In this document: positions 17,578 through 31,881 of the stretch, piece by piece | Layout: each line of letters begins with the position of its first letter | Position numbering within the stretch: position 1 is the stretch's first letter | Virus record (IMG/VR): IMGVR_UViG_3300032236_000747 | Span: 248,001 to 312,000 of that record | Reading direction: 5' to 3' (one strand) | DNA length: 64,000 bases | Notes under the pieces: model-generated | Database searches by the model: none | What the model was told of the DNA's origin: nothing | What the model saw: the letters and a program-made list of their open reading frames with translations, nothing else | Translations under genes and position numbers: made by a program

Positions 17578-18039
17578 ATGATAACCTTAGAGGAATTCCA
17601 CTCTTTTATTGAAAACGATATAGTATATCTCCAGAACTTACTATACTACATTGATGCTCAAGGGCAAGAGCATAAAATCAACAACCTGGGTCATCTTCAT
17701 TCCTTGTACGGGAATACCATAAAACTAGAAGGTGCCGAGAAATACAATAAAGCTCTCTTTGACTATTGTCAATCTTTCAAACACTCGGGTCCAGTAACTT
17801 GCCACATCTTTAGATCCTTCGCAGGCTCACATAGTTTTCCAACCCATGTAGATCCAGATGATGTACACCTTAGGTTGCTATATGGACAGAAAACTATTAT
17901 ACTAGAAGATACAGAACATATTTTGAATCCCAACGACTGCTTATACATACCTGCCAATACTCCCCATCGTGCAATAAACAACGAAGAGTCTTTGATGTTA
18001 AGCATAGGACTTGAAAAGTTTCTTATTGATAAACTATGA
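17578..18039 (+). CDS. Cupin / JmjC-like oxygenase
   Basis: SFPTHVDPDDV...GQK...L.PNDCLYIPANTPHRA. Confidence 0.8.
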   Translation: MITLEEFHSFIENDIVYLQNLLYYIDAQGQEHKINNLGHLHSLYGNTIKLEGAEKYNKALFDYCQSFKHSGPVTCHIFRSFAGSHSFPTHVDPDDVHLRLLYGQKTIILEDTEHILNPNDCLYIPANTPHRAINNEESLMLSIGLEKFLIDKL

Positions 18040-19094
18040 ATTGGCTTTTCTATTTAAAAACTACAGAGACCTGTAATCTCAACTGTAAACATTGTTTCAC
18101 CAATGGAACCAGCGGAGCAAAGATCTATTGGAACAAAGAAAAAGTCAGTAAGTGGTTAAAGGATTTTAGAGAAGAAGTTGGTCCTGGGCATTCAGCTCAC
18201 TGTGAGTTTCATGGGGGAGAGCCATTCCTTGTTGATGTAGAAGAAATGAAACAAGTATACGATGAATGTAAAGACCTTTGGAATAATATGTCATGGGGTG
18301 TAACAACTAATCTCGTATTCAAACTATCTCCTTCTATCATAGAGTTTATTAAAGGGCCCTTAGACAATAGATTAGCTACGAGTTGGGATCCTGATATTAG
18401 ATTTGCTAATCCTAAACAGTATGACCTTTGGAGGAACAATGTTAGGACATTGATAAACGAAGGAGTTACTCTTAAATTGTTTGTCAGTGTTACAAAAGGC
18501 ACAGTTAAAATGAACCCCATTGATCTCTTAGAGTGGATTAGAGACCTGGGAGTGAAAGAAGTAAGTTTTGAGAGATTAACGCACAACGGTAGCGCAAACA
18601 AAAACCCTGATATATTTCCCAGCAACGTAGAACAAGATGCTTGGTTCCTTAGAATGCATCAACAGAGCGAACAGGCAAACGCTAGAACTTGGTTTAATAA
18701 CGAGTTTCTAGAAAATGTTTATACAAAGTTTGAATCCGGATTTAACAAAGCAGGAACTTTCTGCAGGGACTGTGAGGAAAAACTCTTTACGTTAAACGCA
18801 GATGGTTCTATTGCCGGATGCCCAAACAGTGCTCCGGAACAGTATTTCGGACATATAGATACTAGAATACACGATCTACTCAAAGACCCTGCTAGAATAA
18901 ACAACATAGCCTGTGAAAGATCTAGAGATCCTAGGTGTTATTCCTGTGATGTTTTTGAGTTTTGTGGAGGAGACTGCCATCAGTTATCCTGGGAAGACGA
19001 TCAGTGTGGTGCACCTAGAAGCTTGATGCAGTTGTTAGCAGGTATAAATACTCTAAGAAGTCAAAAGATCTTTAAAATAGAGGAAATTAAATGA
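18036..19094 (+). CDS. Radical SAM/SPASM peptide- or protein-maturase-like enzyme 1
   Basis: CNLNCKHC, FHGGEP, SPASM-type CRDC...GCP...C..C...CGGDC...C. Confidence 0.92.
   Translation: MNWLFYLKTTETCNLNCKHCFTNGTSGAKIYWNKEKVSKWLKDFREEVGPGHSAHCEFHGGEPFLVDVEEMKQVYDECKDLWNNMSWGVTTNLVFKLSPSIIEFIKGPLDNRLATSWDPDIRFANPKQYDLWRNNVRTLINEGVTLKLFVSVTKGTVKMNPIDLLEWIRDLGVKEVSFERLTHNGSANKNPDIFPSNVEQDAWFLRMHQQSEQANARTWFNNEFLENVYTKFESGFNKAGTFCRDCEEKLFTLNADGSIAGCPNSAPEQYFGHIDTRIHDLLKDPARINNIACERSRDPRCYSCDVFEFCGGDCHQLSWEDDQCGAPRSLMQLLAGINTLRSQKIFKIEEIK
19043..19050 (+). promoter_or_regulatory. T4-type late promoter TATAAATA upstream of the putative precursor
   Basis: Perfect consensus inside the 3' end of rSAM1, 40 nt before ATG 19091; SD GAGG present. 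Confidence 0.6.
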
Positions 19095-19750
19095 CAACGT
19101 TAAATAATCCGGTCACCTCCCAAAATATTGTTGATAGATTCTACGATTACGTAAACTATACAGCTAGTCAAGGAGTCACTTGGGGTAGTGATGTTATTCC
19201 AGCGGGCGATACTAGCCCAGTGAGCGGAGTTGCTGCATCAGTACCTATTATAGCCAGCACGGATTTTGCAGGGACAGTGGCCGCGGTTACTGATATTGCT
19301 ATTAACGGAGCAAGTATTGGATCATCCGGTGGTACTATTACAGCCTCTGACATTTGGTCGGTGCTGGTAAATGAAACAAGCAGAGAAACACATATTAGAT
19401 ATGTTCAAGCAATTTGCGGAGTAACGGGCACTGGTGGAAATGCTGGTACAAGATTGAGAAACACAACCACTAACAGTGATCCTAATCGTGTTCAAGACGT
19501 ATATAATCTTACAAGGGTAGCTAATATGAGGGCAGGTTTTGCAAGTGGCATAACCAATCCAGCTGCTTCAACCTACTCATTAACCGCTGGAAGTACTATT
19601 AGTTCAACTAACCTTGAATCTTTTTTCAGTGCTTGTCGAGACGCTTATAATAACGCTGCTAGAGCCACTGGATCAGCATATGTATATCGTACTAATGTAT
19701 GCCACGCTAGTTGCCACTCTAGTTGTCATAGTTCAAGAGGAAGAAGATGA
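19091..19750 (+). CDS. Putative modification substrate: Thr/Ser/Gly-rich structural-like protein with C-terminal (CHxS)3-RGRR core
   Basis: Ends NVCHASCHSSCHSSRGRR; embedded among rSAM genes; body has a fibre-like GxTIxxxxI/L motif twice. Confidence 0.7.
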   Translation: MTTLNNPVTSQNIVDRFYDYVNYTASQGVTWGSDVIPAGDTSPVSGVAASVPIIASTDFAGTVAAVTDIAINGASIGSSGGTITASDIWSVLVNETSRETHIRYVQAICGVTGTGGNAGTRLRNTTTNSDPNRVQDVYNLTRVANMRAGFASGITNPAASTYSLTAGSTISSTNLESFFSACRDAYNNAARATGSAYVYRTNVCHASCHSSCHSSRGRR

Positions 19751-20436
19751 ACATCATCGAAACAACAGCACCTATTTCTATAGATAATTTAAAGAAGTAT
19801 TTTGAAGATAAAGAAACTGTCTTTTTAATCGATTATGATAACTCTAATCTTAAAGAAGAAAAACTATTAACTTATCTTAGCAATCTAGAAATACCCTGCG
19901 ACCTAAACATAACAGACAATGATTATCTCTTACCGTTGATAACCTGTTATTTAAAATCTCCACATATGGTAGAAATCCCGTTTCTTGAAAGAATAACAAT
20001 TATTCTTCTCTTGCAACATAAAGGCATTTTAGAAAAACAAGATCTTACTATGTTAGAGTCTTTTAAAGAACTATTAGATCTATGGTGTGAAAGATTAGAT
20101 TCTCTAACATTATATAACTTATATTGTGTTAATGAAGACAATGATTATTTTAAAAACTGGGTATTAGAAACCGGTATAAAGGATGACACAACTGATATGT
20201 CAGGTTGTAACTTTGTTAATCTTTTAAAATATGAAGATTTCTATCGATTCTATCAAAAGAGCAGTTCGACTCCTAAATATTTTCCCTACTACTTTGACGA
20301 GTATGTATTCAAAGGGAAAAACTTATACAGTTATTGGGCCAACAATAACAACCCTATGTTTCTTTTAACATTTGGAATAGCTTCCGGTGTATTTGAACAA
20401 TTCAAGGAAAATTTAAATGCTACACCTATTCAATAA
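19747..20436 (+). CDS. Hypothetical protein in the rSAM cluster
   Basis: Translationally coupled ORF. Confidence 0.8.
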   Translation: MNIIETTAPISIDNLKKYFEDKETVFLIDYDNSNLKEEKLLTYLSNLEIPCDLNITDNDYLLPLITCYLKSPHMVEIPFLERITIILLLQHKGILEKQDLTMLESFKELLDLWCERLDSLTLYNLYCVNEDNDYFKNWVLETGIKDDTTDMSGCNFVNLLKYEDFYRFYQKSSSTPKYFPYYFDEYVFKGKNLYSYWANNNNPMFLLTFGIASGVFEQFKENLNATPIQ

Positions 20437-21520
20437 AGTCTATCTTGCTAGTGATTATACACTATGGAATATTCATGCTGACAAAATATTAATAATATCA
20501 GATCATTATGCCACTGAAGATACAAAAGGATATCAAGGATCTACCTATGTAGGTAAAAGTTTATCAGATGCTTTTGGAGAGAAAACACTGCATGATGTTT
20601 TATCAGAGTTTGCCGCAGGCACTGATAAAGTTATTATCTATGCCGATAACATAAGTTTTGCTGAAATCGCTGCTTCGTGGTTTAAGTCGATTACGCACAT
20701 GGATCAAACAGCCTACGATACATTTGTTGACTGTTATATCTATAAAAGGTCTGTTACTGGGCAAGATGTTGGTCAACTATCTGTTTTAATGAAACAACAG
20801 TTAGAGTCAGCACCGGCATATGATTTTTCTAATATAGCAGTTGATATGCCCTATGAGTTTTTATTAGCATCTGCTTTGGTCAATAGAGACTTTTCTAAGA
20901 AATCTCAGTTTTTAAAAACACAAGCTAAGTTTGTTAAGAGATCATATGAACACCTTATTCTAGAAGCACGCAGGCATTTGGACAACTATATATTAGATGC
21001 TAATTTACAAACAGCTCTAGGGGGCTCTGGTAAAACAATACAAAACTACAAAGAACTACCAAGCCTAGCTGCTTATAAAGAACCTTATTTTAAAGAAGCT
21101 GTTCCTGGGCCAGTAGTTCATAGCTATATTCCCGGACAAGGATCTAAGATCGATATTAGCCAAGGGTCTGATAGCGATATTGATGACCTATGCAGGGTTA
21201 CAAATATCATAAACGTTTCTATAGCAGGTATGACTATTTCAACAGGGCCCAATGGACCGGTTGTTTCTTCTAGTCCATATACAAACAACCTAAGAGCCGA
21301 TGATGGTAATGGTTGGAAATATCTAGCAGCAGCTAGAAGAGGCGAGCTAACCTCTGAAGAGTCTGATGCATTGTTAACTGAGTTCTTAGAACCTAGAGTG
21401 GCATTTGAGTTAGTCCCATTGGATCTATCACAAACTATTGTCATGGTACTACTCCCTTATTTTAAATCTCTTGCTAATAGCGGAAACACTACTGAGCTCA
21501 CTAAGTTTACACTAAAATAA
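20417..21520 (+). CDS. Accessory protein A, paralog of 26608..27714
   Basis: MLHLFNKVYL...KVIIYAD...EFLLA shared with the paralog. Confidence 0.8.
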   Translation: MLHLFNKVYLASDYTLWNIHADKILIISDHYATEDTKGYQGSTYVGKSLSDAFGEKTLHDVLSEFAAGTDKVIIYADNISFAEIAASWFKSITHMDQTAYDTFVDCYIYKRSVTGQDVGQLSVLMKQQLESAPAYDFSNIAVDMPYEFLLASALVNRDFSKKSQFLKTQAKFVKRSYEHLILEARRHLDNYILDANLQTALGGSGKTIQNYKELPSLAAYKEPYFKEAVPGPVVHSYIPGQGSKIDISQGSDSDIDDLCRVTNIINVSIAGMTISTGPNGPVVSSSPYTNNLRADDGNGWKYLAAARRGELTSEESDALLTEFLEPRVAFELVPLDLSQTIVMVLLPYFKSLANSGNTTELTKFTLK

Positions 21521-21521
21521 T

Positions 21522-22550
21522 ATGTCCTTGTATGATGTAATAGACAGGAAGGTCATAGACTATGCTGAGATTGTTGTCTGTTTATTTGATCATTGTAATC
21601 TACGCTGTGCTTTTTGTCCACAACATCACGATGATTTATTAGGTGCCTCTAGGGATGAAATATTAGCCAAGGTTCCGGGCATTGTTAACTGGATTAATAA
21701 TAATACTAGATCAAAGTATTTTAAAATTCATATAATGGGCGGCGAAGTATTTGAAGATATCTTCATAGAACAAGGCTTTATTGAAATCTATCAGGATTTT
21801 ATAGATCAAATAAAAAATAGTGTTCCAAAAGAAAAACACGTTGAAATAAACTTTATAACAAACTTAGTTTTTCAAAAACATCAAACAGTTTTAGATTTTC
21901 TTAATATCAATAACCTAAAAGTTTCAACATCTTACGATCCTCGTGGTCGATTTACTGCTCAACAGTTTGAAACATTTAAAAATAACATAGAGATATTTAA
22001 AGACTATATTAGTATGTTTTCTGTAGTAACTACTAGACAAAACATTGAAGCAGTTATAAAAGGCGATAGTTATTTTGATTATCTATATCAAAACTTTGTT
22101 TGTGATTGGGATTCATTTATACCAGCAATAGCAGAAACAGCCGAAGCAATGATGCCTAGTGAACAAGAGTTATTAAACTTTTATAAACATCTCGTTGACC
22201 ATTATCCGGACTGTATTAATATAGAGTATTTTACTGGTAATGAAAAAGAAAATCACATGAGCTGCACAAGGGGAAACAGTTATACTATTCTAAGAGATGG
22301 TTCTATGCCCGGTGGATGCAGTGGTGCGGTGTTTCTTAAAGATGCTGAAACAAAAAACTTAGAATCAACTATCATATTACATAAGTTTTTTGATACCTAT
22401 GATTGTTTCTCGTGTGAGTATTTTAAGAAATGTCCTTTTACCTGTTTTATAAAAAATGACTACAAAAAAATTAAACGAGATCTCGGAAGCTGTGTTTTTA
22501 AAGAAACCTTTCGATACGTCGATTCAAAACATAAAAGTATCATTCATTAA
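21522..22550 (+). CDS. Radical SAM enzyme 2 with Cys-rich C-terminal domain
   Basis: CNLRCAFC, MGGE, CTRG...GGC...CFSCEYFKKCPFTC. Confidence 0.9.
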   Translation: MSLYDVIDRKVIDYAEIVVCLFDHCNLRCAFCPQHHDDLLGASRDEILAKVPGIVNWINNNTRSKYFKIHIMGGEVFEDIFIEQGFIEIYQDFIDQIKNSVPKEKHVEINFITNLVFQKHQTVLDFLNINNLKVSTSYDPRGRFTAQQFETFKNNIEIFKDYISMFSVVTTRQNIEAVIKGDSYFDYLYQNFVCDWDSFIPAIAETAEAMMPSEQELLNFYKHLVDHYPDCINIEYFTGNEKENHMSCTRGNSYTILRDGSMPGGCSGAVFLKDAETKNLESTIILHKFFDTYDCFSCEYFKKCPFTCFIKNDYKKIKRDLGSCVFKETFRYVDSKHKSIIH

Positions 22551-24255
22551 TCCACCTCACGCCGATTGGTGTTTGGCAAACAATGCTGCTTACTTAATGT
22601 TTCAATCGCATTACAGCAGACACGGCAAAAATAATAAAAAGGTAGAGTGGATACCGGCTCCTTATCGATTTGATCAGTATGAAAATGTTCAACAAATATT
22701 AAACGAAGTTGGGAAAGCTGATGTGTATCTATTTTCTAGTTACATATGGAACTATGATGTATGTGATAGTCTCGCCAGACTAATCAAAGATACCTATCCT
22801 ACAAGCATCTGCGTATTAGGTGGCCCGCAAATAGGAACTAACGAACCAAAGTTCTTAACATCTCGTTCTATGTATGATTATATACTGCGACCAACCAAAC
22901 CCGGTGAAGTATTTGTACAAGAACTTATTGATTCGTATTTCGATAACTTAGGATATCCTGATGTAGAAGATATTTCCTGGGAACTACGTAGCGATAAAAA
23001 ATGCGATCAGTTTATGCCAGATTATAGTGTGTACGAAGAACATATAGAATATCTAACCAATGCTAGAGAACATGCTCGTGAAAATGATCTAGAACCATTT
23101 TGTATTATTGAAACAACTCGAGGATGTCCTTATGCGTGTACCTATTGCGAATGGGGCGGAGGAATAGACAGTAAAATCTATAAGAAGCCTATTGATGTAG
23201 TAAAGCGTGATTTATTAGCATTAAAGAAAGCAGGCTATCGAGATGTTTACCTGACAGATGCTAACTTCGGAGCATTTAAAGATAGGGACTTAGAAATATT
23301 TAAGTTTGCGTGGGACAATGAAATAAATCTAACTGACATCAGTACTATGAAAAGCAAGGATTTGAAAAGAAGAACAGATCTAGTCGATGCATGGTTTAGC
23401 GTTGTAGGATCCGGGCCAGAAAAACACAGCCCTGTTATAACAGGAAGAGAAGGCGGACAAGCTCTTGTTGCCGGACTAGGTGAAATGTCAGCTTTATCAA
23501 ACGATGTTTCTTATATTAGTATTGTACCAACAGTATCTATTCAAAGTATCAGCGATGAAGCTATGAAAGTAGCTAAACGTGCTGACCTATCCTTTCAAGA
23601 TAAAATAAAACTCAGCGAGCATATAAACAATCAGTGCCACAAAGAAGGATATCCTGTTCCTGCTATTGAGTTAATAATGGGAATGCCAGGCAGTACTATT
23701 GATGATTTCTATGCTGAATGGGAAATAATGTGGAACTTCAAAGCATGGACTAGTTATCGACACGATTATATGTTCTTGCCTGACTCCGAGTTAACTAATC
23801 CAGAATATTTAAAAAAGTATGATATTACTCTAGTAGAAGTTTACAGTGATCTAGTAGACGAGTTTGGTATTGATAATCAAAATAGTCTTTATAAAAATAA
23901 ACGTAGTTATTTTAAAACTATATCGTCTTGCTTCTCTTATACATTCGACGAAATGTGTGAAATGTGGTTCATGAATCTAGCTGAGAACAGACTATTAGAA
24001 AAAATATATCCAATGTTTGAAAATGATATTTTACCGAGCGAGTTTGGAAAAATGTGTTATCGAATATTATCTCAAACAGATGAGTTTGCTGTTATCCATA
24101 AACAAATACAAGACCTACTAGATCCAAATACATCTCCAAAAAATATCAAAAGATTGAATGGTAAACTAAGAAACTTTGCTATTGATGACCTCACTGATAA
24201 GTACAGAACTATCATTGTTTCTCAAATATACAAGGAGATGTTATGCATCAACTAA
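22456..24255 (+). CDS. Cobalamin-binding (class B-like) radical SAM enzyme; start uncertain
   Basis: B12 domain FSSYIWN...VLGGPQ; ETTRGCPYACTYC; DANFG; ELIMGMPG. Confidence 0.88.
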   Translation: MTTKKLNEISEAVFLKKPFDTSIQNIKVSFINPPHADWCLANNAAYLMFQSHYSRHGKNNKKVEWIPAPYRFDQYENVQQILNEVGKADVYLFSSYIWNYDVCDSLARLIKDTYPTSICVLGGPQIGTNEPKFLTSRSMYDYILRPTKPGEVFVQELIDSYFDNLGYPDVEDISWELRSDKKCDQFMPDYSVYEEHIEYLTNAREHARENDLEPFCIIETTRGCPYACTYCEWGGGIDSKIYKKPIDVVKRDLLALKKAGYRDVYLTDANFGAFKDRDLEIFKFAWDNEINLTDISTMKSKDLKRRTDLVDAWFSVVGSGPEKHSPVITGREGGQALVAGLGEMSALSNDVSYISIVPTVSIQSISDEAMKVAKRADLSFQDKIKLSEHINNQCHKEGYPVPAIELIMGMPGSTIDDFYAEWEIMWNFKAWTSYRHDYMFLPDSELTNPEYLKKYDITLVEVYSDLVDEFGIDNQNSLYKNKRSYFKTISSCFSYTFDEMCEMWFMNLAENRLLEKIYPMFENDILPSEFGKMCYRILSQTDEFAVIHKQIQDLLDPNTSPKNIKRLNGKLRNFAIDDLTDKYRTIIVSQIYKEMLCIN

Positions 24256-24749
24256 AAGAAAACATTTACAAATACGGATATCATCAACTATTTGAACCTA
24301 GTGCCCTTGATTTAATAAAAGCAGACGAGTTTCGTTTACTCAATGTAGAAGAGCGCAGTAGAGATAATATGATAAAAGATGTACCAACAGAGTTATCAAA
24401 TAGATTAACTACAGTTGCTCATTATTTTAAAACCAAATATATAGATCCTGTATGGGAGAACTCTAGATACAATAAATTTACTATCTGGGAAGGTGTTGAT
24501 CGTGACAACCAAGGATGGCATACTGATTTCTTTGAAGGTTATGATTTATTCTTTCTCTACTACCTTGATGACACATTTGAAGAATCTGGAGGGTATATTG
24601 AGTTTAAATGGGACAGCGGCGAAAAACGTTATCAACCAAAAGCAGGAGATCTGTTTTTAGTTAACAACCTACGTGGCTTCTGGCATCGTGCTGGCAGTTC
24701 TACTATATCTCGTCGTGTAGCAAGTTTTGATTTTAACGCAGGTATCTAA
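24243..24749 (+). CDS. Fe(II)/2-oxoglutarate oxygenase
   Basis: WHTD...GG...P.AGD...WHRA...RRV. Confidence 0.8.
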   Translation: MHQLKENIYKYGYHQLFEPSALDLIKADEFRLLNVEERSRDNMIKDVPTELSNRLTTVAHYFKTKYIDPVWENSRYNKFTIWEGVDRDNQGWHTDFFEGYDLFFLYYLDDTFEESGGYIEFKWDSGEKRYQPKAGDLFLVNNLRGFWHRAGSSTISRRVASFDFNAGI

Positions 24750-24750
24750 A

Positions 24751-25056
24751 ATGCAACAAGTTATTAATGATCTATTAGAAAAGAAGAAAATCCTAGGAGA
24801 TGAAAGAGACCTATGCGCTGAAGTTTATAATGTGTGGATTACTAGGATGTACGAGTGCCAGGACGATCCTGTTAAGTATGAAATGTATATAAACATGATA
24901 CAGGTTATGGAACCATATGGCCAAATGGTTAAAGAGGAAATAAGAGAAATAAATCGTCAGCTTTGTGAAATAGAAGGTGTAGATTCTATAGACGAAACTC
25001 CTTATCTTAGAGAATGCAACAACAAGTATGGAAACGCAAAACCAAACGATATCTGA
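24751..25056 (+). CDS. Small helical hypothetical protein
   Basis: ATG at 24751 directly after the upstream stop. Confidence 0.75.
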   Translation: MQQVINDLLEKKKILGDERDLCAEVYNVWITRMYECQDDPVKYEMYINMIQVMEPYGQMVKEEIREINRQLCEIEGVDSIDETPYLRECNNKYGNAKPNDI

Positions 25057-25552: not shown

Positions 25553-25556
25553 CAAA

Positions 25557-26648
25557 ATGGATCTTATCATTAAACCTACAGAAGTATGTAACTTCAAATG
25601 TACATTTTGTTCATCTACAAAAATCAGTGAAGAACATAGTTCAACACTAGACTTAGATTACGTGTTTAAGTTTCTAAAAAGATTTCCGGAAACTAATACA
25701 ATAATAGTCAATGGTGGAGATCCATTGATGATGCCTGTTAACTATTATTGGGAGATTATTAACTGGCTAGATCAACACAACTACGATCACACTACTCTTA
25801 GTCTTACAACTAATCTTTGGCCATTTTATAAAAATCCAGATAAATGGATTGAGCTATTCAAACATCCAAGGGTTGGCGTTAGTACATCGTTCCAATATGG
25901 TAACGGCCGTCTTAAAGGCAACTATGAAGTCTTTACAGAAGATGACTTTTGGGCAGCATCGAATATGATGCTAGATAAAATAGGTTATCGACCTACCTTC
26001 ATTGCTGTTATCACAGAAGAAAACGAAGACAGCATTATTAAAACAGTAGAGCTTGCTAAGAAGATGGATGTTGTTTGTAAAGTAAATTACGGAATGGCAT
26101 CCGGAGACCAGTCAACTCCATATATGTTATCAAAGATATATAAGGCCTATATAGATATATGGAAGGCGGGACTTTATCCCTGGGAACATAATACGCAGCA
26201 GATGATGACTCGATTAAAAGGAACAGCGACAATCTGCCCACAGGCCCGAAACTGTGATTCGCATATAAGAACACTTCAACCAGAAGGAGATTACTATTCC
26301 TGCGGTGCATTCGGCGACGACAAGGAAAAACCTATTAACTTTGAAGAAGAAATGAGTGGTAAGTTTTTTACACCGTTGTCTGATGACTTTGACATTGCTA
26401 CAATGAAACAATCCTGTTATACTTGTGCTATGTTTGAAATCTGTAATGGTTGCAGAAAAACCGTTAAAGATCAAAAGAGACACGGAATGGTAGAAGAACA
26501 TTGTAAGATGATGAAGTCTCTCGCTCCTGATATAATAACAGCCAATGGAGTTGTTAGGGAAGTTACCCCTTATGTTAAAGAAAGCAATCAAAGAATAATA
26601 AGGATAGTTGATGATACATTTGTTCAACCAAGTTTACCTATCTTATGA
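25557..26648 (+). CDS. Radical SAM/SPASM enzyme 4
   Basis: IIKPTEVCNFKCTFC, NGGDP, CP...C...YSC...CYTC..FEICNGC...C. Confidence 0.92.
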   Translation: MDLIIKPTEVCNFKCTFCSSTKISEEHSSTLDLDYVFKFLKRFPETNTIIVNGGDPLMMPVNYYWEIINWLDQHNYDHTTLSLTTNLWPFYKNPDKWIELFKHPRVGVSTSFQYGNGRLKGNYEVFTEDDFWAASNMMLDKIGYRPTFIAVITEENEDSIIKTVELAKKMDVVCKVNYGMASGDQSTPYMLSKIYKAYIDIWKAGLYPWEHNTQQMMTRLKGTATICPQARNCDSHIRTLQPEGDYYSCGAFGDDKEKPINFEEEMSGKFFTPLSDDFDIATMKQSCYTCAMFEICNGCRKTVKDQKRHGMVEEHCKMMKSLAPDIITANGVVREVTPYVKESNQRIIRIVDDTFVQPSLPIL

Positions 26649-27714
26649 TAATATCATAGATGAAAACATTGATAGAGTAGTAATATCAGAAGAGTTTGGT
26701 AAACATATGTTGCAGTATGCCGCTAGGCCTTCCCACGGGGCATTGTTGTATGCTGGCATGGATATTAATGACCTAGCAACAAATGGTATTAGTGATTTCT
26801 TTAACAACCTAGCAACGCATAAAAATAAAGTTGTTATCTATGCTAGTAGAGATTCGTTCTTAGAAATATTAGTGTTATGGTTTACTTCTCTATTAAAACA
26901 TGCCGACAAAGATACAGTACAAACATTGTGTAAGGCTTTGATCTTTAGGATAGTTGTGTTTTCAAATGGAAGATTTATCACACGCAGCGATAAAAACAAA
27001 ACTGAATATTCGCCGCAATACTACGAGTTCCCACAGGCCGACTTTGATTCATACTATAAGCTAGCACTTGAGTCTAACTTAGATCTAGCACCATTTCTAA
27101 ATAACATAGGTGTTGAGTATATGCTAGCAACATATCTTTACAGCGGTCATTATAAAGAAGAACTTAAATCTTTATTAAAACCCTTGATAAGAAAAGATAT
27201 GATAAAATATCTCTACGAGCTCAAAGAGATATTTCTTGTACATTTAATGACTCCTGCCTTTACAAATAAGATGTCATTAACTAAAGATTATGATTTTAAT
27301 ACATTTACTGATATTATAAATGATGATTCTAGATTTGCTAAAACATTCATGTCTACTCAAATATGGGAAACTCCTTTTATGTCAGCATATGGAAACCATG
27401 ATATCTTTTTAGAAAATATAACTCCAGAAGATATTCAAGTGTTTAAAGACTTTACTCATATTGCTGGAAACACATGGATAGAAGAAAGTGTTTATATATT
27501 TGTTAAATCAGATATTAATAAACTAGACTTTCTAGCTTGTTTTTTAGATTTTACAGATGATCTACTCGATAAGATTATAGAGGCTGAATCAACATTTGAG
27601 CACTCAGCTGGATCTTTCTTTTCTATAGACGTGACTACTGTTAATCATTATCTTGTACAAGGTCTTTTAAAAAATAGAAACAATAAAGAATATCTAAGAT
27701 TGTATTCAATATGA
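26608..27714 (+). CDS. Accessory protein B, paralog of 20417..21520
   Basis: MIHLFNQVYL...KVVIYAS...EYMLA. Confidence 0.8.
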   Translation: MMIHLFNQVYLSYDNIIDENIDRVVISEEFGKHMLQYAARPSHGALLYAGMDINDLATNGISDFFNNLATHKNKVVIYASRDSFLEILVLWFTSLLKHADKDTVQTLCKALIFRIVVFSNGRFITRSDKNKTEYSPQYYEFPQADFDSYYKLALESNLDLAPFLNNIGVEYMLATYLYSGHYKEELKSLLKPLIRKDMIKYLYELKEIFLVHLMTPAFTNKMSLTKDYDFNTFTDIINDDSRFAKTFMSTQIWETPFMSAYGNHDIFLENITPEDIQVFKDFTHIAGNTWIEESVYIFVKSDINKLDFLACFLDFTDDLLDKIIEAESTFEHSAGSFFSIDVTTVNHYLVQGLLKNRNNKEYLRLYSI

Positions 27715-28643
27715 ACATTTCTATTAACCCTTGGTACTACTGTAACTTTCGCTGCGATTTTTGTTATCTAACCACGCAACAGTTATCAGATAAGCAGTTA
27801 CTAGATCTCGATGTACTAGAAACACGTCTAAGAGAAATACCCTCTCCTATTGATCAGGTAGATCTATACGGGGGTGAGATAGGTCTTCTTCCTAAAGAGT
27901 ATTTTCAAAGACTCAAAGAAATCTGTAAAAGATACACTGATAAAATAAACATTATTACAAACTTATCTACAGTAAACAGCATTACCACAGATGAAGATTG
28001 CTATATATCAGTTAGCTATGATTTTGACTGTAGGGAAAATCACGAAATAGTTTTTAAAAATATGATGCTATTAGAAAGACCATTTTCTATTTTAATGCTA
28101 GCTGGAGATAAACTAATAGAGAAAGATGTTAGCCATATGATTAATATGTTTAATCTTATAGGAAACTTGGAATCAGTTGAGATTAAACCTTACAGTAGCA
28201 ACCAAGCTAATCAACAAACGGTTACTTTTAAACAGTTTGAAGATTTTATAATAAAATGGATTGATAGCCCTATTAAGAAAAACTTTTCTTTTATAAACGA
28301 GTTCCTAATAGAAGATGTATTAGATAAAACTAGAAACAGTTTTTCCGATGATCACATTTACATAACTCCTAGTGGTAGATATGCTGTTTTAGAATTTGAT
28401 TTAAATGACAATGAGTTCTTTCTTGAATATGATACATTTCAGGACTACCTAAACTGGTGTTCGATTGAAAAGAAACGAACACACAAGAACTCCTATTGTA
28501 ATCAATGCGAGTATAACGGTCATTGTCTATCTGAACACCTGAGAGATGTCAAAGATCTAAATAATAGTTGTAACGGATTTAAACATCTGATAGATTGGTA
28601 TAAGAATGAAAGACTGGAAGATTCGACAAGAAGTTTATCATAA
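27711..28643 (+). CDS. Radical SAM enzyme 5
   Basis: CNFRCDFC, LYGGE, CNQCEYNGHC...SCNG. Confidence 0.9.
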   Translation: MNISINPWYYCNFRCDFCYLTTQQLSDKQLLDLDVLETRLREIPSPIDQVDLYGGEIGLLPKEYFQRLKEICKRYTDKINIITNLSTVNSITTDEDCYISVSYDFDCRENHEIVFKNMMLLERPFSILMLAGDKLIEKDVSHMINMFNLIGNLESVEIKPYSSNQANQQTVTFKQFEDFIIKWIDSPIKKNFSFINEFLIEDVLDKTRNSFSDDHIYITPSGRYAVLEFDLNDNEFFLEYDTFQDYLNWCSIEKKRTHKNSYCNQCEYNGHCLSEHLRDVKDLNNSCNGFKHLIDWYKNERLEDSTRSLS

Positions 28644-29010
28644 ACTAAATCGTTCACACACGGATGATTTAAACTCAGTTGATATAATAAACACTACCGA
28701 AACAGTAAAAGATGCTGTAAGATATTTTCACGAAACAAACATTGGATGGATATATCCTTCAAAGAGTTATATGGTTGCTATATGTTATGCTAGATGGCTA
28801 GGCGAAAACTTCGGCGGTGATCCTTACGAATATCTAAATGATCCTGATTTGCTTTATGGAAACGATCCTTATTTTATTCCCTATAGAGAATCAAAAAAAG
28901 AATACGATCAAATTTTGATTGATATTAATGGTTGGCAGTTTTCCGAAACTTCAGGTATGGTGCCCGATGTTAAACAATATTTCCTAGAGGAGTTCATGAT
29001 AGATGTATGA
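28606..29010 (+). CDS. Hypothetical protein in the rSAM cluster
   Basis: Overlapping operon ORF. Confidence 0.8.
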   Translation: MKDWKIRQEVYHKLNRSHTDDLNSVDIINTTETVKDAVRYFHETNIGWIYPSKSYMVAICYARWLGENFGGDPYEYLNDPDLLYGNDPYFIPYRESKKEYDQILIDINGWQFSETSGMVPDVKQYFLEEFMIDV

Positions 29011-29629
29011 TGATTTACACAGCCCTTCGGGCAAGGGCAATAGCTGGGGCACTGGCAATAAACTAACCAACGGAGTTAACTTACTGTGGCCTAATCAAGT
29101 TCTATCCGGTAATATAGAAGAAAAGGATTTGTTAGATAAGTTTTCTCAAACTATATTCGAATCTGTAGATTTTTCATCTAATAGATTTTCGGAGTTTGAT
29201 CCGTTAATAGAAGGTCCAGAGATTTGTCAAGAGTTTAAAAATAAAGTTGTTGTGCCCTGCTTTGAAAAGTATCTTAACAACATGGGGCTAAATCTACAAT
29301 CCTTTGGAAACTATAGACTTAAATCTTGGATAACCGGATCAAAAGAAGGATACTCAATATCAGCACACAATCATAGCGGTGCTAGTTTAAGTGCTGTGTT
29401 TTATCTTTTAGTAGGGAATAGAGTAACCGGAGGGGACCTTGTAATAATAGACCCTAGGACCAATGCTAACCGAGGATACCTAGATGCATTTAAACCATTT
29501 TTTGAAAATAAGGTCTTTACACCGCAGTCTGGGGAATATATAATCATACCCGGATATCTTTATCATCATACTACTACATTTTATGGATCACTGAGGCTTG
29601 CTATGCCGGTAGATTTGTTTTTGAGTTAA
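29003..29629 (+). CDS. Putative Fe(II)/2OG oxygenase, phage type
   Basis: HNH...LSAVFYL...DPR...PGYLYH...R. Confidence 0.8.
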   Translation: MYDDLHSPSGKGNSWGTGNKLTNGVNLLWPNQVLSGNIEEKDLLDKFSQTIFESVDFSSNRFSEFDPLIEGPEICQEFKNKVVVPCFEKYLNNMGLNLQSFGNYRLKSWITGSKEGYSISAHNHSGASLSAVFYLLVGNRVTGGDLVIIDPRTNANRGYLDAFKPFFENKVFTPQSGEYIIIPGYLYHHTTTFYGSLRLAMPVDLFLS

Positions 29630-29955
29630 ACTCTAAAACTTTCGCCGCAGCCACAACGGTCGCGTTCATTAGGATTTCTAAACTCAAACCCTTCATTTAA
29701 TCCATTTCGAACATAATCTACAGTTGTTCCTAAAATATATGGAAGGTGTCTGGTGTAAATCTTGATTATGAAATCCGGATAGATAATGCGCTCTTCACTA
29801 GGGTCAAAGGAATCTGGATAGTTTAACCATTCTAAAGTATAAGCTAAACCACTACACCCTGTAGTTTTAACTCCTATCCTAAGTCCTACACTAGCTCCTC
29901 GTTTTATTTTCAACTGTTTAATCTTGTCTAGGGCTTGCTCTGTTAGTGTGATCAT
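29626..29955 (-). CDS. iscA: Fe-S cluster assembly A-type carrier IscA
   Basis: GVKTTGCSGLAY...GLNEGFEFRNPN...CGCGESF. Confidence 0.93.
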   Translation of the reverse strand: MITLTEQALDKIKQLKIKRGASVGLRIGVKTTGCSGLAYTLEWLNYPDSFDPSEERIIYPDFIIKIYTRHLPYILGTTVDYVRNGLNEGFEFRNPNERDRCGCGESFRV

Positions 29956-29993
29956 GTTATTATTTACAATAAATACAATCTAGGGAGAAACAT

Positions 29994-30287
29994 ATGAAAA
30001 AGATCCTTCTAACATTTATCATAGCATTAGCGGCAGTACCTGCAATGGCGCAGTGGCATCATCATCATTGCTGTTATCGAGGCGGATGGGTTGGTCCTGC
30101 CCTCATAGGTGGTGTAGTCGGATATGAGTTATCTCGCCCTCGTACAGTAGTTGTTGAACAACCTATTATTGTACAACAACCACAACAACCTATTATTGTA
30201 CCTAGCGCCGCCCCTGCTGGATATCATTGGCAACAAATGATCAATCCACAAACAAATCAATATCAACTAGTACTGGTACCTAACTAA
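29994..30287 (+). CDS. Small secreted Pro/Gln-rich protein with HHHHCC near the mature N-terminus
   Basis: Signal peptide MKKILL...AMA; SD; TAAATA at 29970. Confidence 0.75.
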   Translation: MKKILLTFIIALAAVPAMAQWHHHHCCYRGGWVGPALIGGVVGYELSRPRTVVVEQPIIVQQPQQPIIVPSAAPAGYHWQQMINPQTNQYQLVLVPN

Positions 30288-30288
30288 T

Positions 30289-30420
30289 ATGAAACTACGT
30301 AAACTAAGAAAAAAGATGTACAAGGCTATATTCAATCATGATGTAGCAAAAGAAAGAAAAACTTGGCTCAAGATTCTTAAAAAATCTATGAAGCACAAAC
30401 ACACCGCAGACGTTCAATAA
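30289..30420 (+). CDS. Small basic protein (43 aa, MKLRKLRKKMYKAIF...)
   Basis: Manual translation; fills the gap, stop overlaps the iscU start. Confidence 0.6.
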   Translation: MKLRKLRKKMYKAIFNHDVAKERKTWLKILKKSMKHKHTADVQ

Positions 30421-30803
30421 TGGCATATTCGGATAAAGTAATAGATCATTACGAGAATCCTAGAAATGTAGGAAAGTTTGACATCGACGATAGTATAGGC
30501 ACGGGCATGGTCGGAGCTCCTTCTTGCGGTGATGTTATGAAACTACAAATCAAAGTAAATGAAGAAGGTATCATTGAAGATGCAAGATTTAAAACATATG
30601 GATGCGGTTCAGCAATCGCATCAAGCTCACTTATCACAGAGCTTGTCAAAGGAATGTCTCTTGACCAGGCGACAGCTATTAAAAACAGCGACATCGCCGA
30701 GGAGTTGGCTCTTCCACCTGTTAAGATTCACTGCTCAATCCTCGCAGAAGACGCAATCAAAGCAGCAGTAATAGATTATAAAAAGAAGAATAATCTGTTG
30801 TGA
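30420..30803 (+). CDS. iscU: Fe-S scaffold IscU
   Basis: YSDKVIDHYENPRNVG, APSCGDVM, GCGSA, LPPVKIHCS. Confidence 0.96.
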   Translation: MAYSDKVIDHYENPRNVGKFDIDDSIGTGMVGAPSCGDVMKLQIKVNEEGIIEDARFKTYGCGSAIASSSLITELVKGMSLDQATAIKNSDIAEELALPPVKIHCSILAEDAIKAAVIDYKKKNNLL

Positions 30804-30811
30804 TCTAACTT

Positions 30812-31552
30812 ATGTTTCAATCAATTTTTCCACCTGCAATAGTTAGAGAACATAGACAAGAAAAACCCAGCAAAGTTTCTAGTGCTAGATTTAGTAATGA
30901 TGAAATACTGGGAAGAGCACTGTTTAGGTCAACTAATAAGTTGAAAGGGAAAGACGGAAGAACATACAACTACATAGATAAAAATGGGGAATATGTTAGT
31001 TCTAGGATTAGCCCTTATAGCCCTTATATAGATGATAATATAGAACCCGGTGTATACGATATAGTTAAATCATTATTAAACAAAGGATACTTAACTGTTA
31101 GTAGTTGTCAAGGACATAGTGATAGGAAATTTAGATTTGTTACGGTTGCTTTTAAAACACAACAAAACTCTGATGAATTTAAAGATGTGTTGATTAACTC
31201 TAAAGTTCCACTACATTTTCAAAAAGTTTCCAAAAATACCGGCTTTTCATTTGTATATGATCAAAATAGATATAACGGTAAAGAACTAGCTGGTGAAGAA
31301 TACAGGAATGTCCCTTATTCTGAATCAGATCTTGTTAAATATCTTAACATAATGTTTTTAAGGAACTACTCCGAATATCATCTATTACAAGTAAGGATAG
31401 CATCTGAACCAGATATAGAGTCTGTAGGAATATTAAAATATATTTTATCAAAGCCATATTATTTTGTTCTATATCAGTTTAGAGATTATTTCACTAAAAA
31501 ACTAGTTTCTTACATTAATACGTACTTAAAAGATTATTCGGACAAACTATGA
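30812..31552 (+). CDS. Hypothetical protein with TYW3-like T.SSC.G motif
   Basis: [26 protein letters not shown]. Confidence 0.55.
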
Positions 31553-31881
31553 ATATTACAATTTCAGATTCTTGTGTATCAAAAATAAAAGACCTTCTTC
31601 TAGAAGAAAATAATCCTTTGTTGAATCTGCGTACATTTGTCCAGGGCGGTGGCTGTTCAGGAATGCAGTACGGATTTACCTTTGATGAAGAAATCAACGA
31701 AGATGATTTTATCTTAGAACAGTCCGGATTTAAAATATTAATAGATAGCATGAGCTATCAGTATCTTCAAGGATCTACCGTTGATTACAAAGAAGATCTA
31801 CAAGGTAGCCGGTTTGTTATTCAAAACCCAAATGCCCAAACAACCTGTGGTTGTGGCAGCTCGTTTAGTGTAGCAGAATAA
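31549..31881 (+). CDS. erpA: Fe-S insertion protein ErpA (A-type carrier)
   Basis: [21 protein letters not shown]...DSMSYQYL...[14 protein letters not shown]. Confidence 0.92.

What the first reader, a model, noticed from the sequence alone, without database searches (positions are those of the whole stretch)
19043..19750. Candidate precursor is a structural-looking protein with a C-terminal core and its own late promoter
Seen: 219 aa, rich in Thr/Ser/Gly/Ala like the tail proteins and unlike its neighbours. It carries two GxTI(T/S)xxx(I/L) modules and a terminal C-H-x-S repeated three times (19700-19735), then RGRR. A perfect TATAAATA lies inside rSAM1, 40 nt upstream. The core can be read as Cys every four residues (thioether chemistry) or as H-x-S triplets (His-to-residue+2 cyclophane chemistry). 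Inference: the substrate is made late and in excess of the enzymes, so the modified tail may be displayed on the virion as a metal-binding or receptor-binding tip.
Basis: partly seen in the sequence, partly recalled or inferred. Interest (0 to 1): 0.85.

Follow-up and report, generated by a model that had tools for sequence, protein, structure and literature searches.

The report
Phage virion protein with radical-SAM-targeted tail
A jumbo-phage gene encodes a folded, structural-type protein ending in an invariant Cys-His-x-Ser x3 + RGRR tail that always sits inside a cassette of radical-SAM and oxygenase genes. A cultured relative of this protein is found in purified virions, so phages appear to chemically mature a virion protein the way bacteria mature peptide natural products.

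Summary
ORF 19091-19750 (219 aa) ends in CHAS-CHSS-CHSS-RGRR, is 46% Thr/Ser/Gly/Ala like the tail-fibre ORFs, and has the window's only TATAAATA 40 nt upstream.

The tail [VI]-C-H-x-S-C-H-x-x-C-H-x-x-R-x-R-R-stop is invariant in more than 150 phage loci, despite free synonymous codon change. It occurs on at least seven BLAST-unrelated carrier domains, including Ralstonia phage RSF1 ORF071 and Agrobacterium phage Atu_ph07 gp170.

Nearly every locus long enough to show its neighbours has cupin/JmjC, rSAM-SPASM, tail protein, two novel-fold proteins, three or four more rSAMs and 2OG oxygenases. The main exception is a set of tandem 124-140-aa loci.

The carrier is a confident globular model with no PDB match.

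ATAAATA is a gene-start signal in this phage: 11 of 12 copies lie within 45 nt upstream of ORFs, against 0-15% for matched 7-mers.

Published virion mass spectrometry of Atu_ph07 detects gp170 (8 peptides, 35% coverage). It is most abundant in the top gel slice despite a mass of 31.9 kDa, and its enzyme neighbours are not detected.

Best reading: a late virion protein whose exposed C-terminal tail is matured in place by the cassette. The chemistry, the metal or receptor role and the "excess over enzymes" claim remain untested. I found no prior description.

The parts
19043..19050 (+). TATAAATA, a T4-type late-promoter-like -10 box inside the 3' end of rSAM1, 40 nt upstream of the ATG
   Evidence: It is the only copy in the window. 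ATAAATA lies within 45 nt upstream of ORF starts in 11 of 12 cases, against 0-15% for composition-matched 7-mers. CATAAATA or TATAAATA sits at the same place in L001, L003, L047 and Atu_ph07.
19080..19084 (+). Shine-Dalgarno GAGGA, 6 nt before the ATG
   Evidence: Read from the sequence. An AAGGA(A) motif is present before the homologous gene in many of the upstream sequences printed, including RSF1 (by eye).
19091..19750 (+). 219-aa carrier protein with C-terminal tail (the finding)
   Evidence: ORF. 341 relatives at E <= 1e-3. AF2 model with pLDDT 83 and pTM 0.80, globular alpha/beta. No PDB fold match. Same fold as Atu_ph07 gp170 in BFVD, TM 0.51.
19328..19354 (+). Module 1, GGTITASDI (residues 80-88), at the start of helix 85-101
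   Evidence: I83, A85 and I88 are conserved in at least 97% of 120 relatives.
19583..19699 (+). Conserved pre-tail module: G-x-x-I...helix (172-191)...strand (198-204). It includes module 2, GSTISSTNL (19589-19615). Candidate enzyme-docking element.
   Evidence: It can be aligned across all carrier types that bear the tail. phrog_35144 (the likely RSF1 ORF071 family: profile length 186 equals ORF071's length) matches residues 165-219. L175, E176 and F179 are conserved in at least 93%.
19700..19735 (+). (C-H-x-S) x3 core: CHAS CHSS CHSS
   Evidence: Cys and His are invariant in 67 distinct tails with synonymous codon variation. There are exactly three repeats in every tail printed; the later scans used patterns that require three repeats.
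19736..19750 (+). R-G-R-R and stop. It is always the extreme C-terminus, and the stop overlaps the ATG of the next gene.
   Evidence: R-4, R-2 and R-1 are invariant.
17578..18039 (+). Cupin/JmjC-type oxygenase, first cassette gene
   Evidence: Pfam JmjC_2 4e-10 and Cupin_2 2.5e-9. It lies upstream of rSAM1 in most loci.
18036..19094 (+). rSAM1, a radical SAM/SPASM enzyme immediately upstream
   Evidence: CxxxCxxC at residues 13-20 and a C-terminal CX2CX5CX3C. NCBIfam SPASM domain 32 bits (cutoff 27). Best full-length hits are PapB at 55.6 bits and anSME at 41 bits, far below their cutoffs. Mean column identity is 67% across 36 loci. The nearest PDB sequences are 8VPO, anSME and CteB, all weak.
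19747..20436 (+). p229, a conserved partner of unknown function (phrog_20767)
   Evidence: No PDB sequence hit.
20417..21520 (+). p367, a conserved partner with a novel fold. It is a paralogue of 26608-27714.
   Evidence: AF2 model pLDDT 85.7. No PDB fold match.
21522..22550 (+). rSAM2 (phrog_1802, SPASM-like CX2CX5CX3C)
22456..24255 (+). B12-binding radical SAM enzyme (methyltransferase-like). It is an optional cassette member.
   Evidence: KedN5-family hit at 6e-26, below cutoff, and Pfam B12-binding plus Radical_SAM. It is present in about half of the loci.
24243..24749 (+). 2OG-Fe(II) oxygenase
   Evidence: Pfam 2OG-FeII_Oxy_3, 2.5e-5.
25557..26648 (+). rSAM3 (SPASM; best hits DynA and anSME, below cutoff)
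26608..27714 (+). p368, paralogue of p367
27711..28643 (+). rSAM4
29003..29629 (+). 2OG-Fe(II) oxygenase (2OG-FeII_Oxy_5), last cassette gene
29626..31881 (.). Phage-encoded Fe-S cluster assembly genes flanking the cassette: IscA-like 29626-29955 (-), IscU 30420-30803 (+), IscA-like 31549-31881 (+)
   Evidence: Pfam Fe-S_biosyn 1.6e-13, NifU_N 8e-53 and Fe-S_biosyn 2.3e-20. The same genes lie next to the cassette in L001 and L002.

Best explanation
The 219-aa product is a virion-associated protein made from a T4-type late promoter. It consists of a globular carrier domain, a conserved helix-strand docking module, and a flexible, exposed 16-residue C-terminal tail, (C-H-x-S)3-R-x-R-R.

The tail is the dedicated substrate of the co-encoded cassette: rSAM1-4, an optional B12-rSAM, and JmjC/2OG oxygenases. 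The phage's own IscU and IscA supply the Fe-S clusters. I infer that these enzymes install intramolecular cross-links centred on the Cys and/or His residues, plus hydroxylation or methylation. The result would be a rigid knob, possibly metal-binding, that stays attached to the carrier and is built into the particle, probably in the tail or fibre region.

Shown here:
- the gene, the tail and its invariance;
- the synteny with the enzymes;
- the predicted fold;
- the gene-start association of the promoter box;
- virion presence of the Atu_ph07 homologue (from a published table).

Inferred:
- that the tail is modified at all;
- which chemistry is used;
- late timing;
- location and role in the virion.
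For: 1. The tail is invariant at the protein level with free synonymous change.
2. The tail is portable. It occurs on at least seven BLAST-unrelated carriers of 124-309 aa, sometimes as tandem genes. It follows an rSAM/SPASM gene in most loci; in the tandem loci, cassette-like enzymes were found only where detectable.
3. SPASM-type rSAMs are characteristically protein- or peptide-modifying, and rSAM1 is far more conserved than the carrier (67% against 47% mean column identity).
4. No other (CH..CH) motif exists in a credible ORF of the window.
5. The carrier is a confident globular model whose last 19 residues have low confidence, consistent with an accessible tail.
6. Atu_ph07 gp170 is in the virion proteome with 8 peptides and 35% coverage. 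It heads the structural cluster CDS 170-215. gp165-169 and gp171-172 were not detected.
7. gp170 is most abundant in gel slice 1, where a 127-kDa protein runs, which points to a heat- and SDS-stable high-mass form.
8. Composition matches the tail-fibre ORFs. In L169 two tail-bearing genes directly follow a 1537-aa tail-fibre-like ORF.
9. Promoter statistics.
10. Precedent: the bacterial HXS system matures a protein-sized HxS-repeat effector with two rSAMs (PMC13128918).
Against: - No direct evidence of any modification exists.
- The published Atu_ph07 virions were only PEG/differential-centrifugation purified, and the list also contains RNR, RecA-like and terminase proteins.
- The loading buffer as described lists no reductant, so the slice-1 species could be ordinary disulfide-linked material.
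- RSF1 ORF071 is annotated only as 'hypothetical', while its neighbour ORF067 is 'virion structural'. The RSF1/RSL2 proteomics paper could not be read.
- No RRE/PqqD domain, protease or exporter was recognised, and the carrier fold matches no known tail protein.
- About two thirds of related loci have no NATAAATA within 100 nt upstream.
- gp55 and gp33 were not looked for outside the window.
Confidence: 0.55

Rival explanations
1. Scaffold for a released product. The carrier acts as an oversized leader or scaffold, and the modified tail is cut off and used as a small RiPP or a peptide-derived cofactor or chelator (as with PQQ, mycofactocin or methanobactin) during infection.
For: - The tail is extremely conserved independently of the carrier.
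- The multi-enzyme redox pathway, with four or five rSAMs and several oxygenases, resembles cofactor pathways.
- Fe-S assembly genes lie alongside.
- Tandem precursor genes occur in some phages.
Against: - No peptidase or transporter was recognised in the cassette.
- The full-size homologue is present in Atu_ph07 virions.
- The carrier is a well-folded, structural-type protein.
- p229 and p367 are uncharacterised, so a novel protease cannot be excluded.
Confidence: 0.15
2. Unmodified metal or disulfide site. The Cys/His tail simply binds Zn, Fe or Cu, or forms intermolecular disulfides in a multimeric virion protein. The rSAMs and oxygenases act on something else, such as another protein, a nucleotide or a small molecule.
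For: - Three Cys-His pairs at i, i+4 and i+8 make a plausible metal site.
- His-based metal sites are established in T4 fibre proteins (own knowledge).
- The slice-1 migration of gp170 could be disulfide-based, because no reductant is listed.
Against: - It does not explain why the gene sits beside or among rSAM genes in all but part of the tandem-type loci, across very distant phages.
- It does not explain why Ser -13 and the three Arg are as invariant as Cys and His.
- No alternative conserved substrate motif was found in the window.
Confidence: 0.15
3. Envelope or DNA-entry factor related in function to HxsA. The basic, rSAM-matured HxS-repeat tail acts in the periplasm at genome delivery, either aiding ejection or countering or mimicking HXS-type host defence, rather than binding a receptor.
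For: HxsA is a protein-sized effector with basic HxS repeats. It is matured by two rSAMs and acts on phage DNA entry. The phage tail has three H-x-S units plus RGRR, and the protein is carried in the virion in Atu_ph07.
Against: - The NCBIfam HxsA model gives no hit, and HxsB and HxsC models score 15-29 bits against cutoffs of 268-370.
- No peptidoglycan-binding domain or signal peptide was recognised.
- The Cys before each His has no counterpart in the HxS consensus.
- The resemblance may be convergent or a coincidence.
Confidence: 0.1
4. Accessory Fe-S or electron carrier. The Cys/His tail ligates a cluster and serves the rSAM enzymes as a redox partner or cluster donor.
For: The tail is rich in Cys and His, and the gene lies next to IscU and IscA genes and many Fe-S enzymes.
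Against: - The composition is structural-type and the carrier domains are diverse.
- The homologue is present in virions while the enzymes are absent.
- IscU and IscA already cover cluster delivery.
Confidence: 0.05

Closest known systems
HXS anti-phage system (HxsA with HxsB/HxsC rSAMs and HxsD; PMC13128918)
   Same: A protein-sized substrate, not a short peptide, carries tandem His-x-Ser units in a basic context. It is encoded next to more than one radical SAM enzyme, and the modified protein itself is the functional product.
   Different: - This system is phage-encoded rather than a bacterial defence.
- It has exactly three units, each preceded by Cys, at the extreme C-terminus and followed by R-x-R-R.
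- Its enzymes are SPASM-type and do not reach the HxsB or HxsC cutoffs, and the HxsA model gives no hit.
- It adds JmjC/2OG oxygenases, a B12-rSAM and two novel-fold proteins.
- No peptidoglycan-binding domain was found.
Ranthipeptide/sactipeptide-type RiPPs (PapB, CteB/SCIFF) and the CXXX-repeat rSAM target family (TIGR04115 / PF27846)
   Same: A Cys at every fourth residue in a C-terminal core lies next to an rSAM/SPASM maturase. PapB is the best full-length NCBIfam hit of rSAM1. A related Atlas cluster carries PF27846 in 25% of its members.
   Different: - All scores are far below family cutoffs: PapB 55.6 against 340, TIGR04115 22.9 against 350.
- The tail has no Asp or Glu acceptor as in the CX3D motif.
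- The 'leader' is a 124-309-aa globular, structural-type domain.
- No RRE, protease or exporter was recognised, and the host is a virus.
QhpC/QhpD and anaerobic sulfatase maturase (anSME): rSAM/SPASM enzymes acting on full-size proteins
   Same: SPASM rSAMs modify Cys in a protein that remains a functional subunit. The last repeat, C-H-x-[SNA]-R, shares the Cys and the Arg at +4 with the sulfatase C-x-[PA]-x-R motif.
   Different: The +2 position is variable (G, S, N, A and others). anSME models score 41-53 bits against a cutoff of 349. There is no sulfatase or dehydrogenase context.
Metal-binding His motifs of T4-type tail fibres and spikes (own knowledge)
   Same: Short His-containing repeats occur in a structural-type phage protein encoded near tail-fibre genes.
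   Different: Those sites are unmodified HxH motifs within trimeric beta-structures. Here the motif is Cys-His-x-Ser at a flexible terminus, it is tied to an enzyme cassette, and no fold similarity was found.

Membership tests
rSAM-modified RiPP (sacti-/ranthipeptide type) | Precursor gene adjacent to an rSAM/SPASM maturase | tested here: met
   rSAM1 lies directly upstream in the window and in nearly all loci long enough to show it. The SPASM domain scores 32 bits against a cutoff of 27.
rSAM-modified RiPP (sacti-/ranthipeptide type) | Short precursor (leader plus core) with leader removal and export genes | tested here: not met
   The carrier is globular, 219 aa, pTM 0.80. No peptidase or transporter family was hit in the cassette.
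rSAM-modified RiPP (sacti-/ranthipeptide type) | RRE/PqqD-like recognition domain in the maturase or as a partner | tested here: inconclusive
   rSAM1 starts at the cluster motif (residue 13), and no PqqD hit was found. p229 and p367 are uncharacterised.
rSAM-modified RiPP (sacti-/ranthipeptide type) | Demonstrated thioether or C-C cross-link in the core | not testable with these tools
   This needs mass spectrometry or NMR.
PapB ranthipeptide maturase (NF047865) | Score above the curated cutoff, and a CX3D/E acceptor motif in the substrate | tested here: not met
   55.6 bits against a cutoff of 340. The tail contains no Asp or Glu.
HXS system | HxsA, HxsB and HxsC family models | tested here: not met
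   No HxsA hit at E <= 10. HxsB scores 29.2 against 370. HxsC scores 15.1 and 26.1 against 267.9.
HXS system | Tandem His-x-Ser repeats in a protein-sized substrate next to two or more rSAMs | tested here: met
   Three H-x-S units are present, with the first Ser invariant and the others S/N/A. Four or five rSAM genes lie in the cassette.
CXXX-repeat rSAM target system (TIGR04115 / PF27846) | Maturase and target family models | tested here: inconclusive
   rSAM1 scores 22.9 bits against a cutoff of 350, so that part is not met. PF27846 is absent from the Pfam copy searched and was seen only as a label on 25% of one related Atlas cluster.
Anaerobic sulfatase maturase substrate | C/S-x-P/A-x-R motif, and an anSME-family enzyme | tested here: not met
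   The +2 position is not P or A. The enzyme scores 41-53 bits against a cutoff of 349.
T4-type late promoter | (T/N)ATAAATA box positioned upstream of genes, above chance | tested here: met
   11 of 12 ATAAATA copies lie within 45 nt upstream of ORF starts, against 0-15% for matched 7-mers. The motif is depleted overall. It recurs upstream of homologues.
T4-type late promoter | gp55/gp33-type late transcription factors in the genome, and a mapped late TSS | not tested
   Only 64 kb of a 354.7-kb contig was available. Atu_ph07 has a weak gp55 match according to its authors.
Phage virion structural protein | Detected in purified particles | tested here: inconclusive
   This is met for the homologue Atu_ph07 gp170 in a published table (8 peptides, 35% coverage). 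However, the virions were only partially purified and nothing is known for this phage.
Phage virion structural protein | Fold or sequence similarity to a known tail, fibre or capsid protein | tested here: not met
   No PDB fold match at E < 3. BFVD matches are only uncharacterised phage proteins. No Pfam or NCBIfam hit.

The most novel reading that the evidence does not exclude
Phages use a RiPP-like, multi-rSAM pathway to mature a structural virion protein. The invariant (Cys-His-x-Ser)3-RxRR tag is a portable 'maturation handle' grafted onto different fibre- or virion-associated carriers. It is converted into a cross-linked Cys/His knob of new chemistry that works at the cell envelope, in adsorption, metal-dependent binding or DNA entry. 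It may be the phage-side counterpart of the host's rSAM-matured HxS-repeat defence effector HxsA.
Probability: 0.35. Interest if true: 0.9.

Novelty: new variant of a known kind. Interest (0 to 1): 0.82.

Why it matters
Radical-SAM maturation of ribosomal peptides and of a few enzymes is well known in cells. I found no report that a virus carries a multi-enzyme pathway of this kind aimed at one of its own virion proteins.

- **Spread.** The cassette occurs in hundreds of environmental T4-like and jumbo phage contigs. It also occurs in cultured phages of Agrobacterium, Ralstonia and Burkholderia, and a neighbouring cassette gene (p229) has homologues in Sinorhizobium and Pseudomonas phages, where the tail protein was not examined.
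- **Cost.** It takes up about 12 kb, and Fe-S assembly genes lie alongside it, so it is costly and presumably important.
- **What it could explain.** It may account for the unexplained abundance of rSAM, 2OG-oxygenase and IscU/IscA genes in marine phage genomes.
- **What it offers.** It offers new rSAM chemistry on a Cys-His-x-Ser motif. It also gives a directly testable case in tractable phage-host pairs, where existing proteomic data could be re-mined.

Tried and rejected
- **INPHARED searches.** Megablast and tblastn of the locus and the protein against INPHARED phages found nothing. This is misleading, because BLAST's low-complexity filter masks the tail (alignments stop at residue 170) and the carriers have diverged. 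Relatives were found through the neighbouring p229 gene instead.
- **Family models.** Pfam, NCBIfam and PADLOC give no family for the protein. PADLOC hits to the rSAMs are generic viperin-core similarity only.
- **Fold searches.** Foldseek against the PDB found no fold match for the carrier or for p367.
- **MACPF lead.** The Atlas lead that p367 is MACPF/CDC-like was rejected. The confident model is mostly helical with a small N-terminal sheet and has no such match.
- **PDB profile searches.** Searches for p229 and p367 found nothing.
- **Literature.** Ten searches covered jumbo phage with rSAM, the motif strings, CXXX repeat, Atu_ph07 and RSF1, and phage SPASM RiPPs. None described the tail or the cassette as a unit. 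Papers only list 'radical SAM', 'cupin' and '2OG' genes.
- **Unavailable paper.** The RSF1/RSL2 virion proteomics paper is not held.
- **Bacterial genomes.** Only 4 loci were found, all on MAG contigs, so this is not a bacterial system.
- **Other signals.** Sigma-70-like promoters and intrinsic terminators are at chance level across 16.5-30.5 kb.
- I left that row out and did not send it elsewhere.
Full report
**1. What is at the coordinates**

The ORF runs from 19091 to 19750 on the + strand and encodes 219 aa. It starts with ATG, preceded by GAGGA six bases upstream. It ends ...NV-CHAS-CHSS-CHSS-RGRR, and its stop overlaps the ATG of the next gene. The finding's start coordinate, 19043, is the first base of TATAAATA, not of the gene.

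- The (CHxS)3 block lies at 19700-19735.
- TATAAATA lies 40 nt upstream, inside the rSAM gene 18036-19094.
- Two G-x-T-I-[TS]-x-x-x-[IL] modules are present, at residues 80-88 and 167-175.
- The composition stands out from the neighbours. T+S+G+A is 46% and charged residues 12%. The tail-fibre-like ORFs at 34-59 kb have 38-46% and 8-11%. The cassette enzymes have 16-30% and 18-29%.

**2. The tail is one of the most constrained elements I have seen in a phage protein**

A database search returned 341 relatives at 37-53% identity. Almost all end in VCHASCHSSCHxSR[GS]RR.

In the first 86 loci held, most of them fetched from IMG/VR, 84 carry an ORF ending in C-H-x-x-C-H-x-x-C-H-x-x-R-x-R-R-stop. 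There are exactly three repeats, and the motif is always the extreme C-terminus.

Across 67 distinct tail DNA sequences, ten positions never change: the three Cys, the three His, Ser -13, and Arg -4, -2 and -1. Their codons vary freely, with TGT/TGC, CAT/CAC, and both AGY and TCN for the invariant Ser. Selection therefore acts on the peptide and not on the DNA.

With the tail removed, the proteins fall into seven BLAST-unrelated groups:
- the 'MATLTNP...QNIVDRFADYV' group of this window (140-295 aa);
- a 124-140-aa group that usually occurs as two tandem genes;
- Ralstonia phage RSF1 ORF071 (186 aa);
- Agrobacterium phage Atu_ph07 gp170 (296 aa);
- three singletons.

The last ~50 residues can be aligned across all of them: G-x-x-I, an amphipathic helix, a short strand, then the tail. 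This is the same region that phrog_35144 recognises.

In 185,579 species genomes the family appears only four times, all on MAG contigs. The system is therefore essentially viral.

**3. Genomic context**

In the window the gene is the third of a co-directional array with overlapping starts and stops, from 17578 to 29629. The array comprises a cupin/JmjC, rSAM1 (SPASM), the tail protein, p229, p367, rSAM2, a B12-rSAM, a 2OG oxygenase, p174, rSAM3 (SPASM), p368 (a paralogue of p367), rSAM4, p134 and a second 2OG oxygenase.

It is followed by an IscA-like gene, IscU and a second IscA-like gene.

The core order is cupin, rSAM1, tail protein, p229, p36x, rSAM2, rSAM3, rSAM4. It is kept in almost every locus long enough to show it, and also in RSF1 (ORF069-075) and Atu_ph07 (gp172-165). 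The B12-rSAM and the oxygenases are variable extras.

In the tandem-gene architecture (L169), the two tail-bearing genes directly follow a 1537-aa ORF with a tail-fibre-like C-terminus. Five paralogous ORFs follow them, two of which give weak rSAM-type Pfam hits.

The window contains no second CH..CH motif in a credible ORF.

rSAM1 is much better conserved than its presumed substrate's carrier, at 67% against 47% mean column identity. Its best family matches are PapB, anSME and DynA. Its nearest solved relatives are 8VPO, anSME and CteB. All are far below family thresholds. It is therefore an uncharacterised SPASM lineage.

**4. The protein is not a classical leader-core peptide**

With a 120-sequence alignment, AlphaFold2 gives a confident globular alpha/beta domain (pLDDT 83, pTM 0.80). 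Confidence falls to 67 and then 52 over the last 19 residues, consistent with a flexible, exposed tail.

Foldseek finds nothing in the PDB at E < 3. In BFVD it finds only uncharacterised phage proteins, among them Atu_ph07 gp170 at TM 0.51. The carriers of the window group and of Atu_ph07 therefore share a fold despite having no detectable sequence similarity.

p367 also gives a confident model (pLDDT 85.7) with no PDB match. This removes the weak MACPF lead from the Atlas. p229 has no lead at all.

**5. The promoter**

TATAAATA occurs once in 64 kb, where 6.0 +/- 1.9 copies are expected. The 7-mer ATAAATA occurs 12 times, where 20.5 +/- 4.1 are expected.

Eleven of the 12 copies lie in the sense orientation within 45 nt upstream of an ORF start. 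Composition-matched 7-mers that do not overlap the motif give 0-15%. One copy precedes the 2308-aa tail-fibre ORF at 52279.

Seven copies have the form ATAAATA-N4/5-ATG. With a T4-like start about 6 nt after the box, this would give leaderless mRNAs. That is a side observation.

The copy at 19044 is one of four with a longer leader (18-42 nt). It and the copy at 29969 are followed by a recognisable Shine-Dalgarno sequence.

Among 63 distinct upstream regions of homologous genes, 21 contain NATAAATA within 100 nt. Sixteen of these lie 16-59 nt from the ATG, at varied distances. The background is 0.29 per kb, so about 2 would be expected. In L001, L003, L047 and Atu_ph07 the box sits at the same place as here, encoded as Ile-Asn (ATA-AAT) of rSAM1.

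The region shows no excess of sigma-70-like sites or terminators.

An internal T4-type promoter in front of the gene is therefore well supported as a sequence signal. 'Late' remains an inference. 'In excess of the enzymes' applies at most to the cupin and rSAM1, because all other cassette genes lie downstream without a terminator.

**6. Evidence that the protein is in the particle**

The Atu_ph07 paper (PMC6102473) reports ESI-MS/MS of gel slices from PEG-purified virions. Supplementary Table S5 lists gp170 with a mass of 31.89 kDa, 8 unique peptides and 35.16% coverage. It was found in slices 1-9 and was most abundant in slice 1.

I confirmed that RefSeq gp170 is the tail-bearing ORF and has exactly this mass. 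gp176 and gp177 also match their listed masses.

Proteins of about 30 kDa peak in slices 7-8 in that table, and slice 1 holds a 127-kDa protein. Most gp170 therefore runs as a heat- and SDS-stable species of at least four times its monomer mass.

The neighbouring enzymes (gp165-169, gp171, gp172) are not listed. The authors name CDS 170-215 as one of three structural clusters, and they do not discuss gp170.

Caveats:
- The virions were only partially purified.
- The list includes some non-structural proteins.
- The loading buffer as described contains no reductant, so the large species could be disulfide-linked through the tail cysteines.

**7. Mechanism**

I commit to the following reading, with confidence about 0.55. 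The gene encodes a late virion-associated protein. Its exposed tail is presented by the conserved helix-strand module and modified in place by the cassette. Cross-links centred on Cys and/or His are made by the SPASM rSAMs, and hydroxylation or methylation is added by the JmjC/2OG enzymes and the B12-rSAM. The protein stays intact and is assembled into the particle, probably in the tail or fibre region.

Rivals (confidence):
- a released peptide-derived product (0.15);
- an unmodified metal or disulfide site, with the enzymes acting elsewhere (0.15);
- an HxsA-like envelope or DNA-entry role (0.10);
- an Fe-S or redox partner (0.05).

The tools cannot distinguish thioether from cyclophane chemistry.

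**8. Comparison with known systems**

The closest functional precedent is the bacterial HXS defence system (PMC13128918). It has a 214-aa effector with five basic HxS repeats, matured by two rSAMs (+8 Da on SHRSS), which acts on phage DNA entry.

The phage system shares the logic but fails the family tests:
- the HxsA model gives no hit;
- HxsB and HxsC models score 15-29 bits against cutoffs of 268-370.

It also resembles ranthipeptide, SCIFF and CXXX-repeat systems in Cys periodicity and in having a SPASM maturase. It lacks their acceptor residues, short precursor, RRE, protease and exporter.

I therefore file it as a new variant of rSAM-dependent protein maturation and not as a member of any named family.

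**9. Novelty**

Ten literature searches found only gene lists mentioning 'radical SAM', 'cupin' and '2OG' genes in RSF1-like phages, Burkholderia phages FLC6 and S13, and marine T4-like genomes. One earlier paper noted tandem dioxygenases in cyanophages. None mentions the tail or links the enzymes to a virion protein. Subscription journals are largely outside the library, so prior description cannot be excluded.

Noticed in passing
window 10364, 16710, 17169, 34284(-), 34354, 51969, 63248: Seven genes have ATAAATA followed by 4-5 nt and then ATG, with no Shine-Dalgarno sequence. If this is a T4-type late -10 box with a start about 6 nt downstream, these genes would be transcribed as leaderless mRNAs. 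The phage also encodes its own IF-1 (33515-33733).
   Followed up: partly
window 29626-31881: A phage-encoded Fe-S assembly set (IscA-like, IscU, IscA-like) lies directly after the rSAM cassette. The same pairing is seen in the 374-kb relative L001. It probably supplies clusters to the five rSAM enzymes.
   Followed up: partly
window 29994-30287: A 97-aa ORF has a signal-peptide-like N-terminus followed by QWHHHHCCYRGGW. It is a second small His/Cys-rich product next to the cassette, has no family hit, and is preceded by ATAAATA and a Shine-Dalgarno sequence.
   Followed up: no
window 20417-21520 and 26608-27714: Two paralogous ~367-aa cassette proteins give a confident AlphaFold model (pLDDT 85.7) with no PDB fold or sequence match. 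Glu147 is the only invariant residue and the N-terminus MxHLF..Y...D is nearly invariant. The family may be a new enzyme or chaperone family.
   Followed up: partly
L169 74-12884; also L092, L112, L124, L151, L168 and others: A second architecture occurs in other phages. Two tandem 124-140-aa genes each end in the same tail. In L169 they sit directly after a 1537-aa tail-fibre-like ORF and before five paralogous phrog_31457 ORFs, two of which give weak rSAM-type Pfam hits.
   Followed up: partly
L152 11753-13467: One 133-kb viral contig carries two adjacent tail-bearing proteins (309 and 260 aa). Their carriers are unrelated to each other by BLAST, and both lie downstream of the cupin and rSAM1.
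   Followed up: no
window 33515-33733, 31944-33269, 33760-34278(-): A translation initiation factor IF-1 homologue, an ATP-dependent DNA ligase and an HNH endonuclease lie between the cassette and the tail-fibre cluster.
   Followed up: partly
window 37216-43362 and 52279-59205: Two very large ORFs (2048 and 2308 aa) have structural-type composition. The second has multiple tail-fibre and collagen-like PHROG matches, and the first has none.
   Followed up: partly
P0097, P0119 (relatives): Two of 120 relatives have Asn or Gln in place of the first His of the tail (VCNAS..., VCQAS...). The first His may therefore be less essential than the other two, or these may be sequencing errors.
   Followed up: no
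BFVD hits A0A8S5USJ7, A0A8S5USV2, A0A8S5USJ8 (Myoviridae sp. ctijX18): Three 504-660-aa proteins of one uncultured myovirus share the carrier fold (TMq 0.42-0.50). Whether they carry the tail could not be checked.
   Followed up: no
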